Shown here in pieces: positions 25,437 through 53,665 of a stretch of DNA of 64,000 nt. Position 1 is the first letter of the stretch, and the number at the start of each line of letters is the position of its first letter. This stretch comes from Selaginella moellendorffii (lineage: Eukaryota; Plantae; Lycopodiophyta): contig NW_003314304.1 of assembly GCF_000143415.4 (NCBI RefSeq), forward strand, positions 1,499,351-1,563,350. Direction: 5' to 3'. Made by a program: the position numbers and the translations under genes. The notes under the pieces are model-generated. The model made no database searches. It was not told the DNA's origin and worked only from the letters and a program-made list of their open reading frames with translations.

Positions 25437-26791
25437 GTGCCATAAATAATATAAGTTAATATTTGTAAAGAAACTAGCAAGAAAGAAAACAATTTAAAAT
25501 TAAACAACCTTTTAAAAATGAAATATTTACTATAATGTTCAAAAAAAGTATTTAGAAAGCATTTTTATTAGAGCTACTCTCAAGTAATACTTGATGTGTT
25601 GCAAATGATTTCATAGTAAAAAATATCTTTATACTTCATTTTTAAAATAATAATTAGTGGTGTTTAATACATATTTTGTATTTTCTAAACAATATCTACA
25701 GACACTCAAAAAATTTTGCTATTAAATTATTGTCATTTAAGCACTTGCTTACAATAGTGAAAGCACAATACAGTGTTTGGTTTTTTAGGATGGCATATAT
25801 ATGTAATTGAGGAGAGTAAATAAATTTCTATATAGAGTTTAGTAAGTAAATGGAATTGTGAACAATGACAATTTTGATAAGTCCTTAAAGTGTAGTTTAT
25901 ACCATATTTTAGCTAAACAATAATTTAAAGAATAAGTTGAAGTTGGTAAAGATAATATAAAGTTATCTCCTACTTAGTTTTGAAATGCATTACCTCAAAA
26001 GGTTTATTAATATTAATTAACTTCATTCCTAGAATTATTTTACCAAAGATGCCAAAATAAAAAATGCCGCTAACATGAAATTATCTGAGTAGTTTTTCTT
26101 TAAAGCATTCAATACTGAAATATCAGAATAAATATAAAAATTATTTTAGAGCAATATACAAAGATACCTCATCAACTTATATCAGGAAATGTAGCATAAT
26201 CATAGTAAAACTAACATTCTGCCATAGCTATAACAATATAGAGGACATTTGATTTATCATTGCCTTGCCAAATAGTCTCAAAAATCAATATAATATTTAA
26301 TTTATTTTAAATGCCCTACATAGTTATTGTTAAATAAAACCAAAATCTTAGATATATTTCAATATAAAATACCTTTGAAAATCCATACTATTTTATAATC
26401 CAAAGTTATAGGATGGATATTAAAATATTTGGCCATAATTGTCTTTTGGTCAATTTCTTTCACAATTTTAGTTTTTATATTGAAATATCATTAATATGAA
26501 ATCATTTGATTAGTTTTTCCTTCACTTGGATTATTAAAAATTCAACACTGAAATAAATTTGAAACATTAGGATAAATATGAAAGAATATTTTAGAGCAAT
26601 AATGCAAACTTACTTCATCAACTTTTCTTAAAAAAAAATACCCCAATCATTCCAAAGACATATAGTAATAATTATATAAAGTATGTTCATCTATCTTCAT
26701 ATTTCCAAACTACCTCGTAAAAATATATATTGATGATCTACTTTAAAATGGTGTTTGTTAAATAAAACTAAAAACATAAATGTTAAATACC

Positions 26792-27149: not shown

Positions 27150-27259
27150 TATATAAAGCATATTTATTTACCTTCATTTTGCTAAACCACCTCATAAAAA
27201 TATAGATTAATGATCTGCTTTAGAATGGTGTTTGTTAAATAAAATAAAAAATTTAAATG

Positions 27260-30200
27260 CTAAATACCTTTGCAAACCCATATTTGTTTTCCCTCCAAGA
27301 TTATGGGATGAAGAGCAAAATATTTTTCCATGATTGTCTCCTGTTTTTCTTTTTTCCCAAATTTAGTTGTCACTAGCTTAAATATCTCTTGCACATCTTC
27401 TGCTTTGGGATTTGTAGTTAGCTTGCTTTTGAGAAGACATGAATCCAAAAAGCTTATAAGCCTTCCCTTGGTTTCATCCACGATTGCATTCACTATCGGT
27501 CCAACACCAGCAAAATGTCCTCCAACTTTGGCCCCAATAAATAATAAGATCAATGTATGTTTAAGTACTAGAGCAAATTTCTTGAGCCAGTTTGGTGGGA
27601 GATCCAATTCAACACCTATAGAACTCTTCACTTGATGACCTTTAGAAGTTCCTTCAGGCCATTCACACAAGTAGTGAAGTCTACCATGTGTTCCCAGTAT
27701 TTTACTGTAATTTTTCCACATATTATTCTCATCAAGAATATATGGATATTTTGGGCAATCTGTCTCCAATTTCAATAATACTCGAAAACACGTTGTATGG
27801 ATTGCATTCACTTTATCTATGATAGACTTGAGTCCATTCTTGAGCTCGTTAACGCTTACTTCAATGTCATTAAGTTTTGTATCCAACTTGTCAAAACGGT
27901 TCTCCATTTTATCAAACATCTTCTTAATATATCTGAGGATTGCATCGAGTTTTGGGTCTTCAATGTTTGGAAACTCAACAACATTTGATGATGCTTTGGG
28001 AATTGTGACTTCTCCAACCTCCTCATAGTCCTTTAAGAGTTCATGAAGCTCAACAAACTTATTCACCACTTCATATTTTTGCTCATTAGGCATCAATAAC
28101 TTGGCCAAAGCATTCTCATCTGAGACTTTCAAATCGTTAATCACATCCCAACTCTCTACTTCATGTGAATAATTCCAAGTGTGAGAGTATTCTAGACCTC
28201 TTTCTCTTGCTTCATATTTGACTTTCTTTAGTGGATAAATAACTGCATCCCATGATTTTGGTTTGCCCACATTATTTAGTATCCTTCTCCACACATAACC
28301 ACGTCTCATCACATTTTCTTCAATTTCCAAAGATGGGCAATCCTCCATACATACCCCAATAATGCAATTTCTAATTTTTTCCATCCATCCTTCAGCTTCC
28401 TTTTCTAAATCCGGCCTTGGTGCATTCTCTACCTCTTTTGGGTAGTAGATGATGACATCAACCCATTGCCTATCTTTCCAATTGTTTGTGTCTCCCCCAA
28501 CTCTCACAATTATCTCAATAAGGTTTTTTTTCAAAGCCACCCATCCATTCCCAAGCCTGAAACCTTTCTTGCTTAATTTGTGAAGTTTAACTTGGATCTT
28601 TGTGAAAATACTTGCAGGAAACAATTTCAAGTCCTTGTCTTTGCATTCAAACCTCCTGCCCCAGTAGTTGTGGTTTTTTTGAGTGTCAATTGGCACTGAG
28701 GGTGACAATAAATCTTCTGGAGGTGAATATTCTTCTTGCAATAATGTTGGCATTATCAGCTCTTTGGGCAAGTTATGCCAATTCCCATCCCATTTATCAT
28801 CCCAAGGCAATATCACTCCCATCTCATGGAGCACTCCAAGAATGTACTCCACTATTTTGTCTTCGTTCCCACATTGTTGCTTCAACTGATGTTTAACTAT
28901 GTGTGTGTCCATTTTACTTTGGAGTTTGCTTGTCTCAGTATGTATGAAGAGCTGCACCACATCCTTGATAAACCATTGGACATCTAAGATGGCAAATTGA
29001 GACACAATGTCGTCCTCTTCATGTCCCAAGCCAAAGTAAATTGCATCACCAGAATCATGTAGAAATTGCAAGATGAATTTGAGAACATTCTTGGAACTCC
29101 TGTGAGGCAAGAGGATTTTGCCAACTTTTTCTAGGGGTATGACCTTCTTGTGACTTGGATCTTGTACCAATTTCCTCTTTGCTTTGAGACATTCCCGTGG
29201 TATTTTTTGCTGGGCTGACAGCAGTTCTTCCAAGCAACTCCCCAACATGGTTTTTATCCCCCTTAAATCTTTCACTTGAGTGGCCACCACCTCAAAACAA
29301 AAGTCATTCCCAAACTCAAGTACTTGCCGATAGCCTTTGTCGGAGATTATTGCAGAAACCACCTCCTTTGGGTCAAAGTCGGGTTCTGGAGTGAAAAAGT
29401 TCAAGGCAATCAAGACCCTGGGCTTCCTTTTGGGTGAGGCTGATTGATGTGAAGCGATGAACCTCAGCCAGTAAACCAAATTCTGCTTGAAAACCTCACA
29501 ATTGCCATCCTCCACCTTGCATACGATCAAGAAGAGATCCTTCTCACTTCCTCTGAGAAAGTACTGGTGGAAAGCATGGAACTCTTCCTGTCCAGCCAGG
29601 TCGCAAATGAGCAGCTTTTGTTTGGTGGTCGCATAGACAAGTGGTTGCAGCTCAATGCCTGCTGTTGAAGCATGCTTTTGGAGACATGATGGAAACCAAG
29701 ACACTCTGCGGCAGAGGTTTTTTTTTATTGTGGTCTTTCCAACCCTGCTAGCACCAAACAAGAAGACATTTGCTGTTGACGGGTTGTCAAAGTCTTTGAA
29801 TGCACTCTGCTGGAAACTTGCTTGAAAGCTTCAGAAGCTTCGGAATCATCACCTAGCTCAAGCACTTCCACGAGGCTTTGGTAGTTTTCCTATCATTGCA
29901 TGTAGTAAATATTTAAATTATTAGAACAAAATGTGTTCTTTAGAACATTTTTATCTATATAATATATAGAGAGTTATTAAATTATTAGGTTCGCCATAAC
30001 CTTAAAATTTTAAAATTTATAATGTTCGTACTAAATTACAATTGAAAATTGACCTCAACTCGTGAGCTCAACTCTTCAACTCGTGAGCTCAAGTATGGTC
30101 CGCGCCCGTATAGTCTTTGCAGCGAACAGTTTGAACAAGTGAGTGCCTTGAAGAGTGCTTCACCTGCCTCCTCTCGAAACGTTGCCACCAGTTTTACTAG

Positions 30201-31076
30201 CTTAATGCAAATGCCACTCTGAAATGCCTGTTCCCACCCTTCCTTGCCAATGTGGTTATCTTCGATGACTAACTCTTCCACCCTGCACTCCTGACTTGCC
30301 AGATCCCTACTCAATTTCCCAAATCCTTCCACTGTCATCCTGTTCCCCAGCAATTGGAGACGTTTCAAGTTGTTTCCTGGTTTCCTAAGGAGTTGGCTAA
30401 GGAGAGTCTCTGGGTTCCCAACCCTGTACAACCAAAGCTCTGTCAAGCAGTCGAGCTGAGCAAAGGCCAACTCAAGCTCCTGAGGTGGTGTGAGGATGTC
30501 TTTGCCTCGCCAATCGAAACGTAGCCCTTTCAAGACCTTGAATTCCTGTGTCATCGTCAGTAGCTTTGCAAACCTCTGCACCTCAATCTGCCAAATATCC
30601 TGTCCCTGCTGAGGAGGAGCAATGCCCTCTGCCACCCTTTGCATTCGATCACTGGGAATGCCCAACCTACAAGCGACCCTGGCAGCGAAGTGGATGAATC
30701 TGATGTCGAGCTGTGGTACCAAAGCGGCCTTGAGAATGTCAATGTGAGCAGCAGCAGCAGCAGCAGCAGACGAACTGCCATCACCAGGAGCATCTCCCAC
30801 ATCCAGAGCCCTGTCTAACCTGGGCGGATTTGAAATGCACCAGTTGAGCACACCAATCAGATCCTCCTCTGTGCCTCCAAACCCCTCAACGGTAGCACTC
30901 ACCTCATCAACAAACTCACCTTTGGATGCGTCAAGCGCCTCCAGCCTCCAGACAAGCTCCCCACAATTAAACTGAATCGCATTGAAGTGCCGCTTGTTGC
31001 CCCGCTTCGCTGCGAGAGCCTCCTTGATCTCCTTGACAGAGTCACAGCGGATCCACACTCGTCGCTCCTCCTCCAT
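27260..31076 (-). pseudogene. TORNADO1-like LRR-Roc-COR gene, copy A, broken into a 346-aa N-terminal ORF and an 833-aa Roc-COR ORF
   Basis: Near-identical to 49126-53421, but ~0.7 kb of LRRs is replaced by filler (~29892-30105, largely AT-rich) and there is a small deletion at ~29817. Confidence 0.85.
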
Positions 31077-39229: not shown

Positions 39230-41600
39230 AAGAATTTCCTTGGAATTATGTGACACTAAGCTTGGCATTGATGTTTATATCCAAGACTTTGGGTTGAGGC
39301 TCACTCTAGATGAAAAAGTGGATGAGAGTAAATGTTACTTACATGACTAAGAGTTCTAAGTTATTAGTAGTGGCATTAAACTCTCCAAGGTGTAACTTTT
39401 AGTCCAAAAGTCCAATTTGACAATTTTACTCTAGCTACTACAATTTTTTCATTGTTGATACTCACTGTAGCTTCATTCAACTCTACACTCTTTTACTTGA
39501 TTAAAGATGTAAAGTTTTGTGTCATGTTCTAGAATTTTGTCTATAGCTACAAGACCATAAATTTATCCATAAATGGATTGATATTACTATAAATAATTAA
39601 AGAGAACAATTTGAGAGACAATCAATGGAGTTCAAATATAAAGGGAGGGCTCATGAATAAAAATGCATCTTATTTTTCAATCAGTATGTGTTTTGGGATA
39701 TTTAGGGTTCAATGTTCTTGGGTTTAAGTAAAATATTAGGATGGGTGACTTTCTGGGAAGTTTAAATTTAGGAGTTTACATTTCATATTAGAAAGGTCTT
39801 GGGTTTAACTCTATTAGTTGACTTAGAGGAATCACATCACATATTAATTAACATTTAGCAGGTTTAATTTGCTGCAACTAAGCTCGACCTAAGGGGTAGG
39901 GTGTCAAGAGAATGGGGCTCTCGACTTCTATTCATGAGGGCATAAACTTACAGAGAAGCGTGGTAGATTGTAGGCAACCAAAGAGAATGACTTAAAAAAT
40001 GATCCATGGGGTTTAAATATAGAGGAAAAAGGCCTATGAATAAACATGCACCCCCTTTTCCAATTGGTCAATGGTCATATTTGGGGTTAAGCATCTCTAG
40101 GCTGGGTGGGAAGTCCAAATTCAAGAACTTACAATTACTTCAATGCAAAGGTATAGTTTTCAACTTCTCTCTCTTCCTTTCATATTCTTTTTTTTGTTTT
40201 GCACTATGTAGTGAGTGAAATGCTTTCACTTGTAAGTTTCTCGCAGGTGCGTGAATAAGACTTGATTAAATCTTATAACCTGCTTTTCCAAAGTTACATT
40301 TAAGATGGCCGAGTGAGCAGTGTGATGTGCTTTTACAATCAAGTGAATAGTGTCTTGACTTCTGCTAATCAAAGTTTGCTTATGGATATAATGTAAAATA
40401 GGTGGGGATGCAATAGGTTTGTTCATTTTTCTCCTAAAGAAAAATCATTCTTTTACTTCTTGTTAAATATATAGTTTTTGATTGTGATGTTCTTCACGTT
40501 TTTTTGAAGGGTGTAACATATGCTCCCTCAGCCAAAGATGTAATTGTTGATTCTATATTATAGGTAAAAGTTTGATAATTAGGATTGTTGCAGGTTTCAA
40601 TCTTAATTTTGATACCAATTTTTAAAGTTTTACCAAGTTTATTTTAAATTAATAAGTTTAAAAATTTTTCTTGACAATCATGAGAAGTCAACACTTTAAG
40701 TTGGAAAGATCACAAAGGTTAACCTTGACTATATAGTATCCAATTTTATTACAACTAAAATGTAGCTTGGATTATTCAATGATAATCTAAACACTTAGCC
40801 ATATGGAGATAAAATGATAATTATCAGCAACTTGCTCTAGATATTGCTTTCTAAGGAATTGTTCTTTTAAAAAACAATGGATTACTATTTTTATTCACAA
40901 TCTTGAAAATTGTGGCTCTTATAAAAAATGATGTAAATATAACATATATGATATTTAGAAACTACAAATGTGAAAGATAAGTTTCTTCTCAAAACTCTTT
41001 AAATGTTACTTATGGTTTTATTGGAGAAATGTTATACAAGTATGTATCACTTTTGCAAAGCATGTAAATCAATAGCAATAACATCCTTTATTCATAGTAC
41101 TTCTTTCAAGAATGCAATTTCAATTCATCTCCAACATTTCAAATGCAACCACTTGTCCTATTATTCTTATGATCACTACTTTTTGTTGATATCTTAACTT
41201 TCAAGGACAACCCATGAATCTCAAGTGTTATTTGGTTTGGATATTTTAGTTAGTCCAAAGGTGCTACTCTCACTCATGTTATTTTTGGAACATAAAATCT
41301 AAGTATTCCTTCTCTTCCTTTCTTTCTTTATAGTACAAAAATTGAATATAAAATTAAGTGGTCACTTGGTAAATACTTAGTACCACGAGGCATCCATAAA
41401 TGTTTCCATGTTGGATATGAAAATGAAATACAATCCACTATTGATATCTAAGGAAAAGCTATCAATTTTAAATAAGGTTACTAACAACTTTAGTGATGGA
41501 TTGTCCTAATCAACTTATTTGTATAAGTTTCTTTTAACACCAACAAAGCTTTCTTTCAAGAGCAAAAGAGGAAACTCTTGAGATTGTCCAATTGTAAAGA
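39230..41600 (+). pseudogene. BXL: GH3 beta-D-xylosidase pseudogene, copy B, retaining extra 5' exon sequence
   Basis: CDTKLGIDV..RLTLDEKV N-terminal motif plus the motifs seen in copy A. Confidence 0.75.
39588..40133 (+). mobile_element. Decayed full-length Cassandra TRIM (LTR 39588-39780, internal region, LTR 39969-40133) with ATTAC TSD
   Basis: Aligns to 43883-44475; ATTAC at 39583-39587 and 40134-40138. Confidence 0.8.
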
Positions 41601-43882
41601 GTAACAAAGATTAATCCAATCACTTACAAAATGATCTATAAATTTATAACAACATTTTGCCCAATCTCAGCAAAACCATTAGTAAATCAAAGTTCTAACC
41701 AACTTTTCATCTTTCCTTGATAATTTAGCTCCACTCGACTAGTATATAGAGCCCCAAGTTGAACAATGTACTTTCAAGATGGTCCTCTTTAACAAGTTCC
41801 ATATATAAATAATATAGTGACTTACCCTTTCCTCTCTTGTGAATTATTGTTTAAAGAGAGTTTGTTTCTAATTCACTTAAATTTTCCCCTTCAGAAACCA
41901 TTTAGTTTGGCATAAAATCTTAGCAACCCAATACTAAATACTAGCCCAAAACTTTGAGAAGAATATATCAACTAGTATATTAGTGATGATTTGAAGCTTG
42001 TTTTGCCAATTTACAAGCTATGATAAACGATTCAGATATTGGTTCTCTAAATGAGGATGGGATAGAGATTGGGAGTAAGCCTAGGCAAACATCTCTAATC
42101 CAAACTTTTCCATTTTGCTCATAAACTTGATTAGCTTTGCAAAGGTTTCGATAGAGTTTGTTTTCAAATTTTTGCATGTTATAAATGTTTATCAAGGCGA
42201 TGTAAATAGGAGTACACTACAATTATGGCTTGTCTTTTTTGTTATGATGGTGGTGATCGCAACCATCACCATGCTTTCGGCATCGTTATAAATGATTAAA
42301 TTTTCTTTTTTTACTTTAAGATCATCTAAAGGAGTCTCACTCATAATCTTTATAGGCCCTGATATTAATTTAAGTGTTTGTTAACCCTCAGATGTGTTTT
42401 TGCAACCACATCAACTTTGTACTTTGCTCTATGTGTCTAGTCCCACTTTGAATACCTAAAGGGCTACATAACCTCTCGGAAAGTCCAAATTTAAAAACTT
42501 ATATTTAGTATTAAAGAAGTCTTAAGTGTGACTCTATTAGTTGATTAAAAGAATTATACCACATGTTAAAATTGATATTTAATAGGTTTAGTTTACTCCA
42601 ATTGGGCTTGACTCGACGGGTAGGGTGTTAAAAGAGCAAGGCTCTTAGAAAATCTGCAACTTTCAACTTCTATTTACGAGAGCGTAAACTTGCAAAAAAG
42701 CATGATGGATTATAAACAATAAAAAAAAATGACTCAAAAATTATTAATATTGTTTTAAATATAAAAATGTACCCTTTGTTCCAATTAGTTATAAGTCTTT
42801 GGGTATTTGAGATTAAGCATCTTTAAATAATACGAGGTTGAATGATATTTTAGAAAGCTTAAATTCAGGAGATTATAGTGTCATAAACAATATAAGTTTA
42901 TGTTTGTAAAGAACATATCAAGAAAGAAAAAATTTTAAAATTACATAACCTTTTAAAAATGAAATATTTACTAGAATGCTAGAAATAAATATTTGGAGAG
43001 CCTTTTCATTAGAACTACTCCCAAATAACACTTGATGTGTTGCATATGAGTTCACAGTGAAAAATATCTTTATACTTCATTTTTAATAGAATTATAAGTG
43101 GTGTTTAATGCATATTTTATATTTTCTAAAAGATATTTGCAAACACTTATAAAGAATTTGCTGTTAAATTATTGTCATTCAAGCACTTGCTTACAATAGT
43201 AAAAGTTCAATACAATGTTTGATTTTATAGGATGGCATATATGTATAATTGAGGAGAGTAAACAAATTTTTATATGGAGTTTAGTAAGTAAATAGAATTG
43301 TGTATAATAACAATTTTGATAAGTTTTTAAAGTGTAGTTTGTAACATCTTTTAACTAAACATTGATTCAAAAAATAGGTTGAAGTTGGTAAAGATAATAT
43401 AAAGTTATCTTTAACAATATGTGATGATAAATAACAATTAAACATATATATTTAGTTTTGAAATGCACTATCTCAAAAGGTTTATTAATGTCAATTGAAT
43501 TCATTTTTAGAATTGTTTTACTAAAGATGCCAAAATAAAAAATGCCGCAAACATAAAATCATTTAAGTAGCTTTTCTTTAAAGCATTCAATACTGGAACA
43601 TCAAAATAAATATGAAAAAATATTTTCAAGCAATATGCAAAGATACCTTATCAACTTATATCAGGAAATGTAGCATAATCATAGTAAAAATAATATTCTG
43701 CAATAGTTATATTAATATAGAGGATGTTTGATTTATCATTGCTTTGCCAAATAGCTCAAAAATCAATATAATTAATGATTTATTTTAAATGCCCTACATA
43801 GTCTCTGTTAGATTAAACTAAAAACATAGATATATATCAATGTAAAATACCTTTGTAAATCCATACTGTTTTATCATCCAAG

Positions 43883-44923
43883 TGTAAGCAACCAAAGGGA
43901 ACGACTCGAGAGACGATCCATGGGGTTCAAATATAGAGGGAAAGGGCCCATGAACAAGAGTGCACCCCCTTTTCCAATCGGTTAAGGGTCTTGGGATAGT
44001 TGGAGTTAAGCGTCCTTGGGTTTGAATAGTACTGGGCTGGGTGACCTCCCGGGAAGTCCAAACTCAGGAGCTTACATTTGGTATCGGAGCGGTCTCGGGT
44101 CCGACTCTGTTGATTGGCTAGGGGAATCGCACCACATGTTGATTGACATCTGGCTGGTCCAGTTTGCTCCCGTTGGGCTCGACCCGAGGGGTAGGGTGTC
44201 AAGAGAGCGAGGCTCTCGGGAGAGCTGCGGCTCTCAGCTTCCGTTCACGAGGGCGTGAACTTGCAAGGAAGCGTGGTGGATTGTAAGCAACCAAAGGGAA
44301 CGACTCGAGAGACGATCCATGGGGTTCAAATATAGAGGGAAAGGGCCCATGAACAAGAGTGCACCCCCTTTTCTAATCGGTTAAGGGTCTTGGGATATTT
44401 GGGGTTAAGCGTCCTTGGGTTTGAATAGTACTGGGCTGGGTGACCTCCCGGGAAGTCCAAACTCAGGAGCTTACATTTGGTATCAGAGGGGTCTCGGGTC
44501 CGACTCTGTTGGTTGGCTAGGGGAATCACACCACATGTTGATTGACATCTGGCTGGTCCAGTTTGCTCGGGGAATCACACCACATGTTGATTGACATCTG
44601 GCTGGTCCAGTTTGCTCCCGCTGGGCTCGACCCGAGGGGTAGGGTGTCAAGAGAGCGGGGCTCTCAAGAGAGCTGCGGCTCTCAGCTTCCGTTCACGAGG
44701 GCGTGAACTTGCAGGGAAGCGTGGTGGATTGTAAGCAACCAAAGGGAACGACTCGAGAGACGATCCATGGGGTTCAAATATAGAGGGAAAGGGCCCATGA
44801 ACAAGAGTGCACCCCCTTTTCCAATCGGTTAAGGGTCTTGGGATAGTTGGAGTTAAGCGTCCTTGGGTTTGAATAGTACTGGGCTGGGTGACCTCCCGGG
44901 AAGTCCAAATTCAGGAGCTTACA
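43883..44923 (+). mobile_element. Tandem Cassandra-type TRIM array with three 194-bp LTRs (43883-44076, 44282-44475, 44730-44923)
   Basis: TGTAAGC...GCTTACA terminal inverted repeats; tRNA-iMet PBS TGGTATC(A/G)GAG after each LTR; purine-rich tract before LTR2 and LTR3; 5S rRNA-like core. Confidence 0.9.
44003..44059 (+). promoter_or_regulatory. 5S-rRNA-derived Pol III internal control region (A box-IE-C box) in the LTR; repeated in LTR2 and LTR3
   Basis: AGTTAAGCGTCCTTGGG..TAGTACTGGGCTGGGTGACCTCCCGGGAAGTCC versus plant 5S AGTTAAGCGTGCTTGGG..TAGTACTAGGATGGGTGACCTCCTGGGAAGTCC. Confidence 0.85.
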
Positions 44924-47900
44924 TTTGGTATCAGAGGCGGTGGTTCGTTGACTATAAGGAAAAACCATAACGTCGGACCCTTCGGCAGGGACTGAGGCAA
45001 AACCAGACAAGGTCGAACAGACTGAAGTGGAATCAGTCCCTCAAGCAGTTCCCAAGTACAAACCAAAGCCCCCACCAGTCTTCAAGGGAGTGAATGACTA
45101 TAAGGTGGTGGAGGATTGGTTTTACGATATGGAGGACTACTTCCGAGCGTTGCGGTTACCGAGCTCGGAGAAGGTCCCATGTGCAAAACCATACTTGGCA
45201 GATAATGCCAAGTCTTGGTGGAGAACAACGGAGGCCAACGAAGGACCGGTGGTCACTTGGGACATGATGAAGGCGAGGATCCGCGCAACATATGTTCCTC
45301 CGAATGCCACTCTGCATCTGAGGGATGAACTGAGTAGGCTGAAGCAGACTGGAACCATCCAGGAATATGTGATCCAGTCCCTAACTCAAAGTTACTCATT
45401 ACACGAGCAACTTTGGTAGAGAGTCGTTCGCGACATCTACTAGCCCTCCGAGGGAAGCTCGGAGGTAGCTTTGTTAAGATCCTTATTGACACGGGTGCTT
45501 CGGATAATTTTGTGGCTGCAGACATAGTCCGGCAAGCCGGACTAACGGTGCAGCGGCTAGGCGAACCAAGGACTATAGAGTTTGTTCAAGGTAGCCAAAG
45601 CACCGATGAGGTACTTCGACAAGCGAAAGTCGAAGTAGGGACTTGGAAAGTAGACATGGATTTCACCGTGTTGGACATGGCGGGATTTGACGTGATCTTC
45701 GGAATGGATTGGTTCAATCGGTTCGTGGTAGCCCTACATGGACAAGGTAGGAACCTTGTGGTACTGGCGAATGCCCAAGGAAAAAGATCTAGGGTGGAGG
45801 CCCAGGATCTAAAGGTAGGGCAAAGCAAGGCCAAAGAATCCTGCTTAAACCTGGTGTCCACGAGAGGACAACTCACTAAAGGAACTAAGGCAGCCTTTTT
45901 GTGCTTACTCTCGGTGAAGAGTGACAAAAAGACAAGAACGGAAGAAGTGCCTTTAGTGATCCAGCGAGTGCTGGACCAATTCCAGGATACCATGCCGGAG
46001 GAGCTACCGGCGGGGTTGCCCCCCGCACGACCGATAGAGCATAAGATTGAGCTGGTCGAGGGCGCAGAGGCGGTGGTTCGTCCACCCTATCGTTTGAACG
46101 AAAAAGAACTCAAGGAGCTCAAGTGCCAACTAGAGGAGTTGGTGGGCAAAGGGTATGTTAGGTTGAGCAAGTCGCCGTATGGGGCGCCGGTATTATTTGT
46201 GAAAAAGAAAGATGGATCTATGCGCATGTGCATAGATTACCGGTTGCTCAACAAATATACCAAGAAGAACAAGTACCCTTTGCCAAGGATTGAGGACCTG
46301 TTCGATAGGTTGGGAAAGGCAAAATACTTCTCGAGGATTGACCTAAGGTCAGGATACTACCAGATCAGGGTAGCTAAGGGAAGATGGTATGGACAGCGGA
46401 ATGCGAGGCGGCATTCGTCCACCTCAAAGGGAAGTTGAGGAAGGCTCCGGTGTTGGCATTACCAGACTTTGGTAAGGACTTTGAGGTAGACACCGATGCT
46501 TCGGACTTTGCGTTGGGCGCAGTTTTGAAGCAAGACAACCATCCAGTAGCGTTCTTCTCGAAGAAGCTGGACAAGGCTCAACAGAAGTGGCCTGCCCACG
46601 AGAAGGAATTGTTTGCGGTGGTCAAGGCGCTCAAGGAGTGGCGACACTACCTTGGGAGACACTTCAAGGTTTACACGGACAATGTGGCAACGAAACACTT
46701 CTTGTCACAACCCGACCTGAGAGGGAAACAAGGTCGGTGGGCCAATGCCTTGGCCGAGTTTGATTGCGAAATTCTGTACAAGCCTGGGAAGAGCAACATC
46801 GTAGCAGATGCGCTAAGTCGAAAAGCGAGCTTGAGGTTGGCGATCTCCAGCGCAACAGCAACCTTCTGGGACGATGTGCGGACAGCATATGAGAATGATG
46901 GTCTAGCACAAGAAGTGTTGTTGAGGAATCTGGAGGCGCGGGAAGCTCACCAGAGAGGTGAGCTGCCAACGGAAGAGAAAACGGGCTATGCGGAACGCAA
47001 CGGACTCATTTATTACAAGCAAACGAGGGTGTATGTTCCAGAAGGGGGACTAAGGAAGGTAGCCTTAGAAGAGTGTCATGACGGACCTCTTGCGGGACAC
47101 GGCGGAGTGCCCAAGACGATGGGCTTACTCAAGAGGAAGTACCATTGGCCAGATATGGCTAAGGACGTCCAAGACTATGTAAAGACATGCCCAATATGTC
47201 AGCAAGTCAAAGCCGTGACGAAGGCTAGTGGGGGCTTGTTGCAAAGCATCCCCATTCCAGATCGTCCGTGGAAATGTCTCACGATGGACTTCATCACGGG
47301 ACTACCCCCAAGCGAGGGGTTCGATGCGATATTCGTGGTGGTGGACCGATTTTCAAAGATGGCACATTTCATACCCACCACAACGGACGTGGATGCGGAA
47401 GGTGTGGCGAAGCTGTTCTTCGAACAAGTGGTTCGAGTGCGGGGAAGGCCGGAAGAGATTATCTCAGATCGAGATAAGATCTTCACTAGTAGGTTCTGGA
47501 GGACACTCCTAGAACAGTATCGCACCAAGTTGAAATTCAGCACAGCCTATCACCCACAGACAGGTAATGGGTATTAAGTCAAGATTGATGGCACTAACAC
47601 TTCTTGACAGACGGACAAACGGAAAGGGTGAATAGGCAGCTGGAGGATTATTTGTGATGCTATGTCTCGGGAGACCAGACCGACTGGGTAAGTCATTTGG
47701 GACTTGCGGAAATGTGTTATAACAACTCACCACATTCGAGCATCGGGGTGAGTCCATGGGAAGTCATCAATGGGCGAGCTATTGAAGGTCCTGTGGAACT
47801 CGGCGTGGCCGAGTATCATGGAGAGTTACCCGCAGTGGAGGCATTCACGGCGGAAAGACTCAACATTTGGAATCTAGTGAGGGATTCCTTGGAACGGGCT

Positions 47901-48440
47901 CAACAAAGGCAAACTAAGTACGCAAACCAAAAGCGTCGGGATGTGGAGTTCCAAGCTGGGGAGAAGGTGTGGCTGAACACCAAGAACCTCAAGCTGCCAA
48001 GTGGGATCAGCCGGAAGTTGACCCAAAGGTAAAAATGCATGTATTCCTGTAAATGAATTGATCTTGAGTTCCTTGAGCAGGTTCGCGGGGCCTTACGAGA
48101 TTGAGGCTCGAATCGGTAAAGTGGCTTACCGACTCCGACTTCCTCGAGAGATGGGGAAGATGCACCCAGTGTTCCACGTGAACTTACTCAAGCCGTACTT
48201 TGAGGATCCGCTTCGCAAGGACCAAGTAAGACCTCTACCCGAGGTTATCCAAGGGGAAGAGGAATACGAAGTTGAGGCCATCCTCAATGCGCGCAAGAGC
48301 AAGCGACAAGGACACGAGGTGAGAGAGTTCCATGTGAAGTGGAAAGGATTTCCACACTGCGAAGCAACATGGGAACCGGAGGAGAACCTAGCGAACGCGC
48401 GAGATCTAGTGGAGGAATTTCTGCAAGGCAGAACTCTATG
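44924..48440 (+). mobile_element. Defective chromoviral Ty3/gypsy gag-pol body: partial gag, protease, RT with catalytic core deleted, RNase H, integrase with 2 introns, chromodomain; no 3' LTR
   Basis: Gag [21 protein letters not shown]; PR LIDTGAS; [21 protein letters not shown] joined to [10 protein letters not shown] at ~46380; RH TDASD; IN HHCC, MDFITGLP, SDRD, HPQT|DGQTERVN, GPY; chromodomain EYEVEAIL..VKWKGF..TWEPEENL. Confidence 0.92.
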
Positions 48441-48495
48441 TACTTATGCAAAGTTCAATTAAAAATATCAATTTGAGAAGTTGAGCAAAAGCATA

Positions 48496-48887
48496 TGTTG
48501 GGACCCGAAGGCGCGCCGAAGGTAAGCTAATTAGCATGGGTTAGCTAGGTCGACCAGGCGTAGGGAGCTACGCCCGACTCCCTGCGGGGATGTCGAATCC
48601 GTAGACGTATTCTACGGAGGTTGGGTTCAAGTCCCAACCCCCTAGTAAAGCAAGGCTGGGTTCAAGTCCCGACCCTATACTAGGGCGTGGTGAGGTGAGG
48701 AGTATAGGGACACCTATATTCCGTTGTCATGGGCTCTTGGCCGGGGAGGCTAACTTAGGCACACCGCTAAGTGGGGGGATGCCCCCGGAGACATGGTCAA
48801 CAAGTCGTAGGATAAAAAAGAGACGTTCGATGTGGGCATCGAACTTCTTCTATGGGTGGTGGAGTTGTAAGGAACCAACTCTGAACA
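48496..48887. mobile_element. GC-rich, hairpin-dense insert with TGTT...AACA ends; probable solo LTR of another family
   Basis: LTR-like termini; absent from unit A; no TSD found. Confidence 0.5.
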
Positions 48888-49125
48888 CTGAATTCAACAC
48901 TGAAATGAACTTGAAACATTAGAATAAATAGAAAAGAATACTTTGGAGCTATAATGCAAACTTACCTCATTAACTTCTGCTATAAAATATACCTCAATCA
49001 TACCAAAGACATATAGTAATAATTATATAAAACATTTTATTTACCTTTGTCTTAGTAAACCATTTATATAGATTGATGATCTGCTTTAGTATGATGTTTG
49101 TTAGATAAAATTAAAAACTTAAATT

Positions 49126-52100
49126 TTAAATACCTTTGCAAACCCATATTTTTCTTTTGTGTAGAATTGTGGGATGAAGAGCAAAATAAGTCTCCATAAT
49201 CGTCTCCTGTTTTTCTTCTTTCCCAACTTTAGTTGTCACTAGCTTAAATATCTCATACAAATCTTCTGCTTTAGGATTTGTAGTTAGCTTGCTTTTGAGA
49301 AGACATGAATCCAAAAAGCTTATGAGCCTTCCCTTGGTTTCATCCACCATTGCATTCACTATCTCTCCAGCACCAGCAAAATGTCCTCCAACTTTGGCCC
49401 CAATAAATAATAGGATCAATGTATGTTTAAGTACTGGAGCAAATTTCTTGAGCCAGTTTGGTGGGATATTCAATTCAACACCTACAGAATTCTTCACTTG
49501 ATGACCTTTATCTCCCTGAGTATAAGATCCTTCATGCCATTCACACAAGTAGTGAAGTTTAACAGGTGTTCCCAGTATTTTGCTATAATTTTTCCACCTA
49601 TTATTCTCATCGAGAATATATGGATATTTTGGGCAATCTGTTTCCAATTTCAATAATACTTGCAAACACCTTGTATGGATTGCATTCACTTTATCCATGA
49701 TAGACTTTAGTCCATTTTTGAGCTCGTTAAAGCTTACTTCAATGTTATCAAGTTTTGTATCCAACTTGTCAAAACAATTCTCCATTTTATCAAGCCTTTT
49801 ATCAAAATATCTAAGGATTGCATCAAGTTTTGGGTCTTCAACATTCGGAAACTCAACAACATCTAATGATGCTTTGGGAATTGTGACTTCTCCAACCTCC
49901 TCATAGTCCTTCAAAAGTTCATGAAGTTCAACAAACTTATTTACCATTTCATGTTTTTGCTCATTGGGCATCAATAGCTTGGCCAAAGCATTCTCATCTG
50001 AGACTTTCAAATCATTATTCACATCCCAGCTCTCTGCTTCATGTGAATAATTCCAAGTGTGGGAGTATTCTAGACCTCTTTCTTTTGCTTTACATTTGAC
50101 TTGCTTTAGTGGACAAATAACTGAAGCCCATAATTCTAATTTGCCCACCTTATTTAGTATCTTTCTCCATACATAACCACGTCTCATCACATTTTCTTCA
50201 ATTTCCAAAGATGGGCAATCCTCCATACATACCCCAATAATGCAATTTCTAATTTTTTCCATCCATCCTTCAGCTTCCTTTTCTAAATCCGGCCTTGGTG
50301 TATTCTCTACCTCTTTTGGGTAGTAAATGATGATATCAATCCATTGCCTATCTTTCCAATTGTCTGTGTCTCCCCCAACTCTCACAATTATCTCGATAAG
50401 GTTTTTTTTCAAAGCCACCCATCCATTCCCAAGCCTGAAACCTTTCTTGCTTAATCTGTGAAGTTTAACTTGGATCTTTGTGAAAATACTTGCAGGAAAC
50501 AATTTCAAGTCCTTGTCTTTGCATTCAAACCTCCTGCCCCAGTAGTTGTGGTTTTTTTGAGTGTTAATTGACAATAAATATCCTGGAGGTGAATAGTCTT
50601 CTTGCAATAGTGTTGGCATTATCAACTCTTTGGGTAAGTTATGCCAATTCCCATCCCATGTATCATCCCAAGGCAATATCACTCCCATCTCATGGAGCAC
50701 TCCAAGAATGTACTCCACTATTTTGTCTTGGTTCCCACATTGTTGTTTCAACTGATGTTTAACTTGGTGTGTATCCATTCGACTTTTGAGTTTGCTGGTC
50801 TTCTCTGTAGGTATGAAGAGCTGCACCACATCCTTGATAAACCATTGGACATCTAAGATGACAAATTGAGACACAATGTCGTCCTCTTCATGTCCCAAGC
50901 CAAAGTAAATTGCATCACCAGAATCATGTAGAAATTGCAAGACGAATTTGAGAACATTCTCGGAACTCCTGTGAGGCAAGAGGATTTTGCCAACTTTATC
51001 TAGGGGTATGACCTTCTTGTGACTTGGATCTTGTACCAATTTCCTCTTTGCTTTGAGACATTCCTGTGGTATTTGTTGCTGGGCTGACAGCAGTTCTTCC
51101 AAGCAACTCCCCAACATGGTTTTTATCCCCCTTAAATCTTTCACTTGAGTGGCCACCACCTTAAAACAAAAGTCATTCCCAAACTCAAGTACTTGCCCAT
51201 AGCCTTTGTCGGAGATAATTGCAGAAACCACCTCCTTTGGGTCAAAGTCGGGTTCTGGAGTGAAAAAGTTCAAGGCAATCAAGACCCTGGGCTTCCTTTT
51301 GGGTGAGGCTGATTGATGTGAAGCGATGAACCTCAGCCAGTAAACCAAATTCTGCTTGAAAACCTCACAATTGCCATCCTCCACCTTGCATACGATCAAG
51401 AAGAGATCCTTCTCACTTCCTCTGAGAAAGTACTGGTGGAAAGCATGGAACTCTTCCTGTCCAGCCAGGTCGCAAATGAGCAGCTTTTGTTTGGTGGTCG
51501 CATAGACAAGTGGTTGCAGCTCAATGCCTGCTGTTGAAGCATGCGTTTGGAGACATGATGGAAACCAAGACACTCTGCGGCAGAGGTTTTTTTTTATTGT
51601 GGTCTTTCCAACCCTGCTAGCACCACACAAGAAGAGCTTTGCTGTTGACGGGTTGTCAAAGTCTTTGAATGCACTCTGCTGGAAGATTGCATTCCGCTCT
51701 AAAAGACCAGAACACCTCTGCTTGAAAGCTTCAGAAGCTTCGGAATCATTGCCTATATCAAGCTCTTCCACGAGGCTTTGGTAGTTTTCCTCCAGGGCAG
51801 CCAGAATTTGTCTCTTCTGTGCATCACTTCTAAGAGAAGGAGCCCTGAATTTGAGCAACTTGCATTTTGGATCTCCCAGCAACTGGCAAAGGTCTTCCAG
51901 GTTTTCAAAATTTCGCTGAGATATTCTCAAGTCTTCAATGCTGCTTCCCAAAAGGCACCTCCATGGCAGCTCCGACTCACATGACAAAGCTTTCAGATAC
52001 TTGCAGCTGGTGATAGCTTTCCAAAAGAGCTCCCCATTCGTGATTTTGCAGCTCCATATATCCAAATGCTCCAGTTGGCTCTTCTCTATGCCCTCGGCAA

Positions 52101-53421
52101 ACTCCAACGTTAACTCATCTTCTCTACTACTCCATATTTCCAAATGGCGCAGCTTAAAATGTGGACTTGAGAGGGCTGACCACAGACTGCTGTCACAGAC
52201 CACTCCTCCTCCCTCGTTGCGAAAAGAAAGTTTAAGCTTGATCAGCTTGCAATTGGGATTTTGTAGCGCTCTGCCCAACCATCCACCACCATCACCTGGA
52301 TAAAGTGTAACGATGAGTTCCTCCAAGCCACACTTAGCGCTGCTCAGGGCCTCACCCAGGCCCGTTGCATTGCTCAGGTCCTCACTTCGGCAATCTAAAA
52401 CTGACAGGCTGGTGCCCTCCTGAAGAGCCTTGCATACCCATGGCAACACTGCAGGATCAGTTTCCCAAAGTAGGTATAGTCTTTGCAGTGAACAGTTTGG
52501 ACTCGTGAGTGCCTTGAAGAGTGCTTCACCTGCCCCCTCTGGAAACAGTGCCTTCAGTTCTATTAGCTTATTGCAAATGCCATTCTGAAATGCCTGTTCC
52601 CACCCTTCCTTGTCAATGTCCTCATCCAGAACGATGGCTAACTCTTCCACCTTGCACTCCTGACTTGCCAGATCCCTACTCAATTTCCCAAATCCTTCCA
52701 CTGTCATCCTGTTCCTCTCCAACCAGAGATGTTTCAAGTTGTTTCCTGCTTTCCTAAGGAGTTGGCTAAGTAGAGTCTCTGGGTTCCCAACATGCCACAA
52801 CTGGAGGTCTGTCAAGCAGTCGAGCTGAGCAAAGGCCAACTCAAGCTCCTGAGGTGGTGTGAGGACGTCTTTGCCTTCCCAATTGAATATTAGCAATTTC
52901 AAGACTTTGAATTCCTCTGTCATCATCAGTAGCTTTGCAAACCTCTGCACCTCAATCTGGCCAATATCCTGTCCCTGCTGAGGAGGAGCAATGCCCTCTG
53001 CCACCCTTTGCATTCGATCACTGGGAATGCCCAACCTACAAGCGACCCTGGCAGCGAAGTGGATGAATCTGATGTCGAGCTGTGGTACCAAAGCGGCCTT
53101 GAGAACGTCAATGTGAGCAGCAGCAGCAGCAGCAGACGAACTGCCATCACCCACATCCAGAGCCCTGTCTAACCTGGGCGGATTTGAAATGCACCAGTTG
53201 AGCACACCAATCAGATCCTCCTCTGTGCCTCCAAACCCCTCAACGGTAGCACTCACCTCATCAACAAACTCACCTTTGGATGAGTCAAGCGCATCCAGCC
53301 TCTCCCCACAATCAAACCGAATCGCATTGAAGTGCCGCTTGTTGTCCCGCTTCGCTGCGAGAGCCTCCTTGATCTCCTTGACAGAATCACAGATGATCCA
53401 CTCTCGTCGCTCCTCCTCCAT
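49126..53421 (-). CDS. TORNADO1-like Roco protein (novel N-terminal domain, RI-type LRRs, Roc GTPase, COR, coiled coil), ~1431 aa in a single ORF
   Basis: P-loop GASRVGKTT, G3 ICDLAGQEEFHAFH, COR FLHDSGDAIYF/ILDVQWF, coiled coil, TRN1-like LHYLCE and KVGGHFAG, terminal WVC. Confidence 0.88.
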   Translation of the reverse strand: MEEERREWIICDSVKEIKEALAAKRDNKRHFNAIRFDCGERLDALDSSKGEFVDEVSATVEGFGGTEEDLIGVLNWCISNPPRLDRALDVGDGSSSAAAAAAHIDVLKAALVPQLDIRFIHFAARVACRLGIPSDRMQRVAEGIAPPQQGQDIGQIEVQRFAKLLMMTEEFKVLKLLIFNWEGKDVLTPPQELELAFAQLDCLTDLQLWHVGNPETLLSQLLRKAGNNLKHLWLERNRMTVEGFGKLSRDLASQECKVEELAIVLDEDIDKEGWEQAFQNGICNKLIELKALFPEGAGEALFKALTSPNCSLQRLYLLWETDPAVLPWVCKALQEGTSLSVLDCRSEDLSNATGLGEALSSAKCGLEELIVTLYPGDGGGWLGRALQNPNCKLIKLKLSFRNEGGGVVCDSSLWSALSSPHFKLRHLEIWSSREDELTLEFAEGIEKSQLEHLDIWSCKITNGELFWKAITSCKYLKALSCESELPWRCLLGSSIEDLRISQRNFENLEDLCQLLGDPKCKLLKFRAPSLRSDAQKRQILAALEENYQSLVEELDIGNDSEASEAFKQRCSGLLERNAIFQQSAFKDFDNPSTAKLFLCGASRVGKTTIKKNLCRRVSWFPSCLQTHASTAGIELQPLVYATTKQKLLICDLAGQEEFHAFHQYFLRGSEKDLFLIVCKVEDGNCEVFKQNLVYWLRFIASHQSASPKRKPRVLIALNFFTPEPDFDPKEVVSAIISDKGYGQVLEFGNDFCFKVVATQVKDLRGIKTMLGSCLEELLSAQQQIPQECLKAKRKLVQDPSHKKVIPLDKVGKILLPHRSSENVLKFVLQFLHDSGDAIYFGLGHEEDDIVSQFVILDVQWFIKDVVQLFIPTEKTSKLKSRMDTHQVKHQLKQQCGNQDKIVEYILGVLHEMGVILPWDDTWDGNWHNLPKELIMPTLLQEDYSPPGYLLSINTQKNHNYWGRRFECKDKDLKLFPASIFTKIQVKLHRLSKKGFRLGNGWVALKKNLIEIIVRVGGDTDNWKDRQWIDIIIYYPKEVENTPRPDLEKEAEGWMEKIRNCIIGVCMEDCPSLEIEENVMRRGYVWRKILNKVGKLELWASVICPLKQVKCKAKERGLEYSHTWNYSHEAESWDVNNDLKVSDENALAKLLMPNEQKHEMVNKFVELHELLKDYEEVGEVTIPKASLDVVEFPNVEDPKLDAILRYFDKRLDKMENCFDKLDTKLDNIEVSFNELKNGLKSIMDKVNAIHTRCLQVLLKLETDCPKYPYILDENNRWKNYSKILGTPVKLHYLCEWHEGSYTQGDKGHQVKNSVGVELNIPPNWLKKFAPVLKHTLILLFIGAKVGGHFAGAGEIVNAMVDETKGRLISFLDSCLLKSKLTTNPKAEDLYEIFKLVTTKVGKEEKQETIMETYFALHPTILHKRKIWVCKGI

Positions 53422-53500
53422 GGAAGTTTGCCCTGGATCGAAGGGGCAGTGGAGAGCACGAGTAAAACGTGAACCTTGCCAGCAGTGGACTAAAGAAAGT

Positions 53501-53665
53501 ATGCCAGCTGTGGAAGAAAAGCAAAGCATATGCCAGCTGTGGAAGCAAAGCATATGCCAGCTGTGGAAGCAAAGCATATGCCAGCTGTGGAAGCAAAGCC
53601 ATCGTATGAAAGCAAAGCGGACAGTACAAGCAAGAGAAAGCAAAGCGGACAGTACAAGCAAGAGT
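53501..53665. repeat. 24-bp tandem repeat x4 plus a ~28-bp repeat x2 upstream of Roco B
   Basis: ATGCCAGCTGTGGAAGCAAAGCAT x4; AAGCAAAGCGGACAGTACAAGCAAGAG x2. Confidence 0.85.

What the first reader, a model, noticed from the sequence alone, without database searches (positions are those of the whole stretch)
44730..48440. 5S-rRNA-derived (Cassandra) LTR directly heading a chromoviral gag-pol: candidate autonomous partner of Cassandra
Seen: LTR3 (TGTAAGC..GCTTACA, 5S A/C boxes) is followed by PBS TGGTATCAGAG. Instead of the short non-coding TRIM internal region, a gag frame follows, starting at ACC-ATA 44967 (probably a mutated ATG, in frame with gag) only ~45 nt after the LTR, then PR, RT, RH, IN and a chromodomain. 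Established: Cassandra elements are non-coding TRIMs with 5S-derived LTRs, and to my knowledge their mobilising element is not identified. Inference: this is either a decayed member of an autonomous Ty3/gypsy family with Cassandra LTRs (so Cassandra would derive from a chromovirus), or a template switch at the shared iMet PBS during co-packaging, which would still name the helper. This copy is dead: gag and RT deletions, a TGA in IN, and no 3' LTR.
Basis: partly seen in the sequence, partly recalled or inferred. Interest (0 to 1): 0.92.

Follow-up and report, generated by a model that had tools for sequence, protein, structure and literature searches.

The report
Cassandra array fused to dead chromovirus
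In the spikemoss Selaginella moellendorffii, a tandem array of a tiny 5S-RNA-carrying parasitic retrotransposon (Cassandra type) is fused to a broken chromovirus that keeps a stub of its own, different end repeat. It is therefore a recombination scar and not a self-sufficient Cassandra, but the two elements share all their end signals, which makes this chromovirus family a candidate for Cassandra's long-sought helper.

Summary
Three 194-bp LTRs (43883-44076, 44282-44475, 44730-44923) carry a 5S-like core with box A and box C 18 nt apart. Each is followed by an initiator-Met-type PBS. After the third PBS, Cassandra homology stops and a chromoviral gag-PR-RT-RH-IN-chromodomain remnant runs to 48462.

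The reading "autonomous element with Cassandra LTRs" is not supported, for two reasons:
- Directly after the polypurine tract, the gag-pol body keeps a 16-nt stub of a 3' LTR (48866-48881). The stub differs from the Cassandra LTR start at 4 of 16 positions. It matches 16/16 the start of a 1,110-bp LTR with no detectable 5S similarity, which heads the only related gag found outside the window (locus L001).
- A paralogous empty site in the window shows that 43883-48890 is inserted DNA at one spot, with about 136 bp of host and the right target duplication lost.

What is shared between the Cassandra-type element and this chromovirus is limited to four things: the first 13 nt of the LTR, the last ~17 nt of the LTR, the PBS, and the last ~42 nt of the internal region (a hairpin plus the polypurine tract). 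Two unrelated chromoviruses share none of the two signals I could compare (LTR start, last 60 nt of internal region).

Best reading: the join came from recombination between these short shared signals. The chromovirus family is a candidate helper, but this is not proven. Only one outside copy could be examined.

The parts
43878..43882 (.). Last 5 host bases before LTR1 (CCAAG). This is the candidate left target-site duplication; its right partner is lost.
   Evidence: Alignment with the paralogous empty site.
43883..44076 (+). Cassandra-type LTR1 (194 bp, TGTAAGC...GCTTACA) with a 5S-like core.
44077..44281 (+). Cassandra internal region 1 (205 bp): PBS, a non-coding core, then a hairpin and polypurine tract at its end.
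44282..44475 (+). Cassandra-type LTR2.
44476..44729 (+). Cassandra internal region 2 (254 bp; the same as region 1 plus a 49-bp internal duplication). The hairpin is at 44691-44708.
44730..44923 (+). Cassandra-type LTR3. It differs from LTR1 only at LTR position 181, where it has the base also seen in the L001 LTR end. Box A is at 44851-44862 and box C at 44881-44893.
44926..44937 (+). PBS (11 of 12 bases match the Cassandra PBS quoted in PMC7215508). This is the last stretch shared with the Cassandra internal regions, so the join lies somewhere between LTR position 123 and here.
44958..48462 (+). Chromoviral gag-pol remnant, given as one broken gene. gag has lost its N-terminus with the start codon, and also its C-terminal part (one ~165-residue gap with a frame change). 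RT has one ~160-residue gap with a frame change. The integrase C-terminal part has two frame changes and one in-frame stop.
45192..45374 (+). gag capsid domain (PF03732).
45467..45760 (+). Aspartic protease domain (PF08284).
46199..46378 (+). Reverse transcriptase, N-terminal fragment only (PF00078, profile positions 1-86 of 205).
46390..46761 (+). RNase H domain (PF17919 / PF17917).
47050..47556 (+). Integrase zinc-binding domain and catalytic core (PF17921, PF00665).
48079..48423 (+). Integrase SH3 domain and chromodomain (PF24626, PF00385).
48463..48865 (+). 3' untranslated region of the chromovirus. Only its last ~42 nt resemble Cassandra: a hairpin at 48825-48844 and a G-rich tract at 48854-48865. 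Two T-arm-like 30-nt repeats lie at 48618-48682.
48866..48881 (+). 16-nt stub of the chromovirus's own 3' LTR. It matches the start of the L001 LTR 16/16. It matches the Cassandra LTR start 12/13 and then diverges.
48882..48890 (.). 9 nt of junction filler. The 9-mer at 48884-48892, which overlaps the first two host bases, repeats host bases 48896-48904. This looks like an end-joining scar of the deletion that removed the rest of the 3' LTR and about 136 bp of host.
26404..26538 (.). The paralogous empty site. The host sequence here has no counterpart at the insertion locus. The flanks 24086-26403 and 26539-27534 match 41497-43881 and 48891-49400.

Best explanation
The locus is a composite with two components:
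- A young tandem array (three LTRs, two internal regions) of a Cassandra-type, 5S-carrying TRIM.
- A young but defective chromovirus of a family that has its own ~1.1-kb LTR with no detectable 5S similarity.

The chromovirus's 5' LTR is gone, so the array's last LTR and PBS run straight into gag. Its 3' LTR is cut to a 16-nt stub.

Most likely origin (inferred): the chromovirus inserted into, or within about 130 bp of, a Cassandra array in the same orientation. A chromosomal deletion then removed everything between two short direct repeats that the elements share (LTR end plus PBS, about 30 nt). A second deletion removed most of the 3' LTR and the host flank.

Nothing at this locus can function any more.

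The informative point is what the two elements share: both LTR termini (the sites integrase acts on), the PBS (minus-strand priming), and the polypurine tract with an upstream hairpin (plus-strand priming). These are the signals a non-coding parasite must share with the element whose proteins copy it. On that basis the chromovirus family is a candidate helper of Selaginella Cassandra. This is inference; function was not shown.
For: Shown:
- One insertion block with host flanks. These are collinear with a paralogous empty site, and about 136 bp of host is missing on the right.
- The 3' stub matches the L001 LTR start 16/16 (local score 16, 0 of 2000 shuffles reach it). Against the Cassandra start it scores 11.
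- In L001, a gag 81% identical at the nucleotide level (73% at the protein level) is preceded by a PBS and by a 1,110-bp LTR, L001:1687-2796.
- That LTR has no Rfam 5S match at E up to 10. It shows no similarity to the Cassandra LTR under scoring that tolerates C-to-T decay, while decayed Cassandra copies used as positive controls score 145 and 90 against a background near 20-25.
- Shared signals: last 60 nt of the internal regions, score 14, 0 of 1000 shuffles; LTR ends, score 13, 0 of 2000; LTR starts, score 11, 2 of 2000. The hairpins sit at matching positions, with different inner base pairs.
- Controls from two unrelated chromoviruses are not significant.

Circumstantial support for a chromosomal deletion:
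- The locus already carries several other deletions.
- Tandem arrays are the usual product of unequal exchange between complete TRIMs (PMC4717578, PMC7215508).
- Cassandra-type remnants are dense in this window, with at least five other stretches.
Against: - Only one related copy outside the window could be examined. It is decayed, probably transcript-derived, and of unknown species.
- The stub is only 16 nt long.
- No unfused intermediate was seen.
- The chromosomal route needs two insertions close together plus two deletions. A single chimeric insertion needs fewer events.
- Both parts look equally young (CpG observed/expected 0.62 and 0.79, against 0.18 for an old copy). That would also fit a single joint insertion.
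- The right target duplication, which could decide the matter, is deleted.
Confidence: 0.5

Rival explanations
1. The join was made during reverse transcription. Cassandra RNA and chromovirus RNA were packaged in one particle. A strand transfer guided by the shared PBS (or the shared LTR end) moved synthesis from one template to the other. The chimeric DNA, with a Cassandra LTR at the 5' end and the chromovirus LTR at the 3' end, was integrated in one step. This would be direct physical evidence that the chromovirus family handles Cassandra RNA.
For: - The join lies in the only stretch the two share at the 5' side, from LTR position 123 to the end of the PBS.
- There is one insertion block at one host site.
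- Both parts look equally young.
- Both ends of such a DNA would carry the termini shared by the two families.
- This route needs fewer separate events than the chromosomal one.
Against: - A single strand transfer gives one 5' LTR, not three LTRs with two internal regions, so extra steps are needed.
- The matching target duplication that would prove a one-step insertion is deleted.
- A chromosomal deletion between the same repeats gives the same join.
- No second example was found.
Confidence: 0.25
2. One reading: the gag-pol belongs to a family whose true LTRs are the 5S-type Cassandra LTRs, so Cassandra is a deletion derivative of a chromovirus.
For: - A Cassandra LTR and PBS directly head gag.
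- The 3' end has a Cassandra-like polypurine tract, and its LTR start is 12/13 identical to Cassandra's.
- S. moellendorffii already has one TRIM with a Ty3/gypsy relative that shares its LTRs, SmoRetroS4/SmoLTRA4 (PMC4717578).
Against: - The stub differs from the Cassandra LTR at 4 of 16 positions, and all four match the L001 LTR. LTR1-3 differ from each other at no more than 4 of 194 positions.
- The related copy has a 1.1-kb LTR with no detectable 5S similarity.
- Apart from the PBS at its start, the Cassandra internal region resembles the chromovirus only in its last ~42 nt.
Confidence: 0.07
3. Assembly artefact. The assembler joined a Cassandra array to a nearby chromovirus through their shared ~30-nt LTR-end/PBS stretch and skipped real sequence between them.
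For: - The two families share a short identical stretch.
- TRIM arrays are hard to assemble.
- No reads were available to me.
Against: - The record belongs to GCA_000143415.2, which from my own knowledge is the 2011 Sanger assembly. Sanger reads are much longer than 30 nt, and one read can span internal region 2, LTR3 and unique gag sequence.
- Both host flanks are collinear with the paralog.
Confidence: 0.07

Closest known systems
Cassandra TRIMs (Kalendar et al. 2008; PMC7215508; Maiwald et al., doi 10.1101/2023.07.14.548913)
   Same: - Short non-coding LTR element: the unit is 593 bp, within the published 565-860 bp range.
- The LTR has a 5S-derived core, with box A and box C 18 nt apart.
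- Initiator-Met-type PBS, tandem arrays, and a 5-bp target duplication (old copy at 39588-40133).
   Different: - Each box and the PBS deviate by one base from the published degenerate pattern.
- The 5S part lacks about 34 positions and scores below Rfam's gathering score.
- The host is a lycophyte. The papers I could read list ferns and angiosperms only.
- The 5S part reaches to 3 nt from the LTR end, as described for ferns.
TRIM and autonomous-relative pairs of Gao et al. 2016 (PMC4717578), e.g. SmoRetroS4/SmoLTRA4 in S. moellendorffii and OsajRetroS10/OsajLTRA10 in rice
   Same: A TRIM and a protein-coding LTR element in one genome that share replication signals. The Selaginella example is also Ty3/gypsy.
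   Different: In those pairs the LTRs are of equal size and 79-98% identical over their whole length. Here only 13 nt at one LTR end and about 17 nt at the other are shared, and the LTR sizes are 194 bp against about 1,110 bp.
Helenus TRIMs and their Copia counterparts (Kojima 2024, PMC10886601)
   Same: A TRIM carrying a polymerase III promoter whose similarity to its presumed helper lies outside the body of the LTR. Kojima predicts that such TRIMs should share little LTR sequence with a helper, and states that no helper is indicated for Cassandra.
   Different: Helenus carries tRNA-like sequence, not 5S. Its link to a helper rests on PBS or internal similarity only. No physical fusion with a helper was described.
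Inter-element recombination and illegitimate deletion in LTR retrotransposons (Cassandra in pear, PMC4079214; deletion between short repeats is general knowledge of plant genomes)
   Same: Chimeric or truncated elements produced by recombination between short shared stretches.
   Different: Here the partners are a TRIM and a coding chromovirus, and the exchange point lies in their shared priming and integration signals.

Membership tests
Cassandra (5S-carrying TRIM); applies to 43883-44937 | The LTR contains a 5S-derived core with box A and box C about 18 nt apart. | tested here: met
   The published motifs match with 1 substitution each, and the gap is exactly 18 nt. Rfam 5S gives 34.4 bits, E 1e-4, below the gathering score of 38.
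Cassandra (5S-carrying TRIM); applies to 43883-44937 | Initiator-Met-type PBS next to the 5' LTR. | tested here: met
   11 of 12 bases match the PBS quoted in PMC7215508, starting 2 nt after each LTR.
Cassandra (5S-carrying TRIM); applies to 43883-44937 | No coding capacity; unit length 565-860 bp. | tested here: met
   The unit is 194+205+194 = 593 bp. No ORF above 54 codons lies within the array; a 78-codon minus-strand ORF starting in LTR3 runs past its end.
Cassandra (5S-carrying TRIM); applies to 43883-44937 | 5-bp target-site duplication. | tested here: met
   The old copy at 39588-40133 is flanked by ATTAC on both sides. This cannot be tested for the young array because its right end is lost.
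Cassandra (5S-carrying TRIM); applies to 43883-44937 | Transcription by RNA polymerase III from the LTR. | not testable with these tools
   No expression data for this element were available.
   The 3' stub differs from the Cassandra LTR start at 4 of 16 positions and equals the L001 LTR start.
   The only relative found has a 1,110-bp LTR without 5S or Cassandra similarity. The sample is a single copy.
Chromovirus (Ty3/gypsy with chromodomain) | Domain order PR-RT-RNase H-IN, with a chromodomain at the integrase C-terminus. | tested here: met
   Pfam hits in that order; Chromo E 1.5e-16.
Chromovirus (Ty3/gypsy with chromodomain) | Assignment to a named chromovirus clade. | not tested
   No clade-labelled library was available. 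The nearest proteins are only 45-53% identical.
TRIM/autonomous pair in the sense of Gao et al. 2016 | LTRs of similar size and 79-98% identity. | tested here: not met
   Whole-LTR comparison is not significant (18 of 500 shuffles reach the score). Only the termini match.

The most novel reading that the evidence does not exclude
The fusion is a product of reverse transcription: a strand transfer at the shared PBS between Cassandra and chromovirus templates packaged in one particle. It would then be the first physical trace of Cassandra being handled by an identified autonomous family. That would name a chromovirus as Cassandra's helper, in the earliest-branching plant lineage in which a 5S-carrying TRIM has been seen.
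Probability: 0.25. Interest if true: 0.85.

Novelty: new member of a known kind. Interest (0 to 1): 0.58.

Why it matters
Cassandra elements are widespread in vascular plants and have no genes of their own. Kojima (2024, PMC10886601) states that there is no indication of which autonomous family moves them, and Gao et al. (2016) reported no protein-coding relative for Cassandra.

This locus does not show an autonomous Cassandra. It does point to one chromovirus family that shares with a Cassandra-type TRIM exactly the short signals a helper and its parasite must share. It does so in a small, sequenced genome, where a simple census can test the idea.

The locus also appears to extend 5S-carrying TRIMs to a lycophyte. 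The papers I could read list only ferns and angiosperms. That bears on whether Cassandra arose once at the base of vascular plants or several times.

Tried and rejected
Searches for more copies:
- Each open piece of gag-pol was searched on its own, by reference.
- The gag piece found one relative, P0001/L001.
- The chromodomain piece and the RNase H-integrase piece found nothing above 54% identity.
- The search of cluster representatives gave at most 53% identity.
- Exact-pattern scans with a conserved gag 34-mer found nothing in metagenome, prokaryote-genome or viral contigs, and a Cassandra LTR-plus-PBS pattern found nothing in metagenome contigs.

Is the L001 LTR a decayed Cassandra LTR? 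I rejected this:
- nhmmer finds only the LTR end plus the PBS.
- Decay-tolerant alignment lies within the shuffle range, while the positive controls are far above it.
- Rfam finds no 5S. Rfam also misses the decayed Cassandra copies in the window, so the Rfam negative alone is weak.

Other negative results:
- Similarity between the Cassandra internal core and the chromovirus leader or 3' UTR is absent outside the last ~42 nt.
- A tRNA or Helenus-like origin for the T-arm-like repeats in the 3' UTR found no support.
- I could not reach the allelic haplotype scaffold. Exact look-ups of 24 candidate ORF products near the element failed, and the one locus fetched, L005, stops about 10 kb short.
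- The control contigs L002-L004 end just inside their LTRs. In those controls the LTR starts are my inference from the polypurine tract.
- Chromovirus clade placement was not done.

A slip to report: while reasoning I recalled from memory a plant 5S rRNA sequence and a commercial cDNA adapter sequence. Neither was put into a tool call, a note or this report. No conclusion rests on them: the boxes were tested with motifs quoted from PMC7215508. The adapter remark about L001 is marked as my own knowledge.


Full report
SOURCE. Two window ORFs (an EIN3-like protein and a tyrosyl-tRNA synthetase) are exact matches to Selaginella moellendorffii proteins on a 1.66-Mb contig of that genome. Near-identical alleles lie on the 315,748-bp scaffold GL377709.1 of assembly GCA_000143415.2. 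The GC-rich blocks of the window are host genes. The finding holds the only gag-pol in the window.

THE OBSERVATION. Three direct copies of a 194-bp LTR lie at 43883-44076, 44282-44475 and 44730-44923. They are separated by internal regions of 205 and 254 bp; the second carries a 49-bp duplication. The LTRs differ from each other at 1-4 positions. Each gives a sub-threshold but significant Rfam 5S match of 33.7-34.4 bits, against a gathering score of 38, with E about 1e-4 and an internal gap of about 34 model positions. The published Cassandra search pattern (PMC7215508) matches exactly these three LTR-plus-PBS stretches when one substitution per block is allowed. It gave no match in 50 shuffles, and the box A to box C gap is the canonical 18 nt. 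An old, C-to-T-decayed copy at 39588-40133 is flanked by a 5-bp duplication. The family is therefore a real mobile TRIM of Cassandra type.

After LTR3 the PBS (44926-44937) is the last stretch shared with the Cassandra internal regions. Downstream, Pfam finds gag, protease, a partial RT, RNase H, integrase, SH3 and a chromodomain, in that order. The core observation is correct.

STATE OF THE CODING REGION. I give counts only. Against five intact chromoviral polyproteins the region aligns in five pieces, with four frame changes, one in-frame stop and two missing segments of about 160 residues each. By gene:
- gag lacks its N-terminus with the start codon, and its C-terminal part.
- RT has one large gap.
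- The integrase C-terminal part has two frame changes and one stop.

ONE INSERTION BLOCK. The window contains a segmental duplication. Coordinates 41000-43881 match 23453-26403 at 84-89% identity, and 48891-49400 match 26539-27534. Aligned base by base, host sequence runs up to the first base of LTR1 and resumes at 48891. About 136 bp present in the paralog (26404-26538) have no counterpart here. The whole of 43883-48890 is therefore inserted DNA at one spot, and the right-hand target duplication is lost. Nine bases at the right join (48882-48890), partly repeating the adjacent host bases, look like an end-joining scar.

THE 3' END. About 400 nt after the stop codon, right at the edge of the block, lies a G-rich tract followed by TGTAAGGAACCAACTC (48866-48881). 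The Cassandra internal regions end in a very similar tract followed by an LTR that starts TGTAAGCAACCAAAGG. The last 60 nt of the two internal regions align with a score that 0 of 1000 shuffles reach. Both fold into a hairpin at a matching position, with the same outer pairs and loop type but different inner pairs. Apart from the PBS at its start, nothing else in the Cassandra internal region resembles the chromovirus.

THE ONE OUTSIDE RELATIVE. The gag piece finds a single protein, P0001 (73% identity). It lies on a 6-kb Logan contig, L001, which holds two decayed copies of the family. One is in reverse orientation and is interrupted by one in forward orientation.

Upstream of the forward gag there is a decayed PBS, preceded by an LTR end that matches the Cassandra LTR end over its last ~17 nt. 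About 1.1 kb further upstream, the interrupted reverse copy stops, and the sequence TGTAAGGAACCAACTC begins. That is 16/16 identical to the window's stub. The family's LTR is therefore L001:1687-2796, 1,110 bp.

This LTR contains 12-nt tandem repeats and has no box C. It gives no Rfam 5S match. Apart from its two ends it shows no similarity to the Cassandra LTR, even under scoring that forgives C-to-T decay, while decayed Cassandra copies used as positive controls score 145 and 90 against a background near 20-25. The stub differs from the Cassandra LTR start at four positions, and all four agree with L001. By my estimate the chance of that is about 1 in 80 if the stub were a mutated Cassandra LTR.

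WHAT FOLLOWS. The gag-pol had its own 3' LTR, of a type with no detectable 5S similarity. Reverse transcription normally makes both LTRs of a new copy alike, so an element with Cassandra LTRs at one end and this LTR at the other is a recombinant and not a family.

The join lies between LTR position 123 and the end of the PBS. LTR3's only private difference, at position 181, is the base also seen in the L001 LTR end. This hints that the exchange happened inside the shared LTR-end/PBS stretch.

L001 has about 360 nt between its PBS and the conserved gag start, where the window has about 35.

HOW THE JOIN AROSE (inferred). I favour a chromosomal deletion between the ~30-nt direct repeats shared by the two elements, after the chromovirus had landed in or beside a Cassandra array (confidence about 0.5 for the full scenario; about 0.85 that the locus is a recombinant of two different elements). 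The reasons:
- Arrays are the usual product of unequal exchange between complete TRIMs.
- This locus already shows several other deletions.
- Cassandra-type remnants are dense here.

The main rival (0.25) is a strand transfer at the shared PBS during reverse transcription of co-packaged RNAs. It needs fewer events and fits the similar youth of both parts (CpG observed/expected 0.62 and 0.79, against 0.18 for an old copy), but it does not explain the array. The lost target duplication would have decided between them. An assembly artefact (0.07) cannot be excluded without reads.

THE HELPER QUESTION. The two elements share the first 13 nt of the LTR (12/13), the last ~17 nt (15/17), the PBS, and the hairpin-plus-polypurine end. 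Shuffle tests give 0-2 of 2000 and 0 of 1000. Two unrelated chromoviruses give nothing at their LTR starts or their polypurine ends; in those controls the LTR starts are my inference. The shared stretches are the sites for integrase, minus-strand priming and plus-strand priming. This matches what Kojima predicted for a TRIM with a polymerase III promoter: little shared LTR body, because the helper must keep a polymerase II promoter. It is circumstantial evidence, from one locus and one outside copy.

LITERATURE. Kojima 2024 states that there is no indication of the family that mobilises Cassandra. Gao et al. 2016 found protein-coding relatives for only 11 TRIM subfamilies. One is a Selaginella Ty3/gypsy element with 104-bp LTRs, which is not this one, and they reported no 5S sequence in TRIMs other than Cassandra. 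The papers I could read list Cassandra from ferns and angiosperms, not lycophytes.

LIMITS.
- The allelic haplotype could not be reached.

Noticed in passing
window 43883-44923, 39588-40133, 42447-42735, 25071-25434, 22399-22548, 62521-62676: A 5S-carrying, Cassandra-type TRIM family in the lycophyte Selaginella moellendorffii: one young array and at least five old remnant stretches in 64 kb. The papers I could read report Cassandra only from ferns and angiosperms, and Gao et al. 2016 reported no 5S sequence in Selaginella TRIMs.
   Followed up: partly
window 39583-40138: An old, heavily C-to-T-decayed Cassandra-type copy (546 bp) with an intact 5-bp target duplication, ATTAC on both sides. 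Rfam's 5S model no longer detects it.
   Followed up: yes
window 23453-31076 and 41000-53661: A segmental duplication (84-89% identity) that carries two Roc-COR (ROCO) genes on the minus strand. The copy at 49126-53661 is one open frame of 1,511 codons. The other is split into two ORFs. The Cassandra remnant at 42447-42735 has a counterpart at 25071-25434, so it is older than the duplication.
   Followed up: partly
window 48618-48682: Two adjacent 30-nt direct repeats in the chromovirus 3' UTR that look like a tRNA T-arm. There is no ARAGORN or Rfam hit. A tRNA-carrying TRIM (Helenus-1_SMo) is known from this species, but I found no link to it.
   Followed up: partly
L001:1-30 and L001:1751-2058: The Logan contig starts with what I recognise, from my own knowledge, as a cDNA-synthesis adapter, so it is probably transcript-derived. 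This suggests that old copies of the chromovirus family lie in transcribed DNA. Its LTR carries a block of 12-nt tandem repeats.
   Followed up: no
window 40186-40279 (minus strand): A sub-threshold Rfam match to RT-9 RNA (31 bits against a gathering score of 46, E 0.008), just downstream of the old Cassandra copy. Probably chance.
   Followed up: no
window 44520-44568: A 49-bp tandem duplication inside the second Cassandra internal region. It is the only length difference between the two units of the array.
   Followed up: yes
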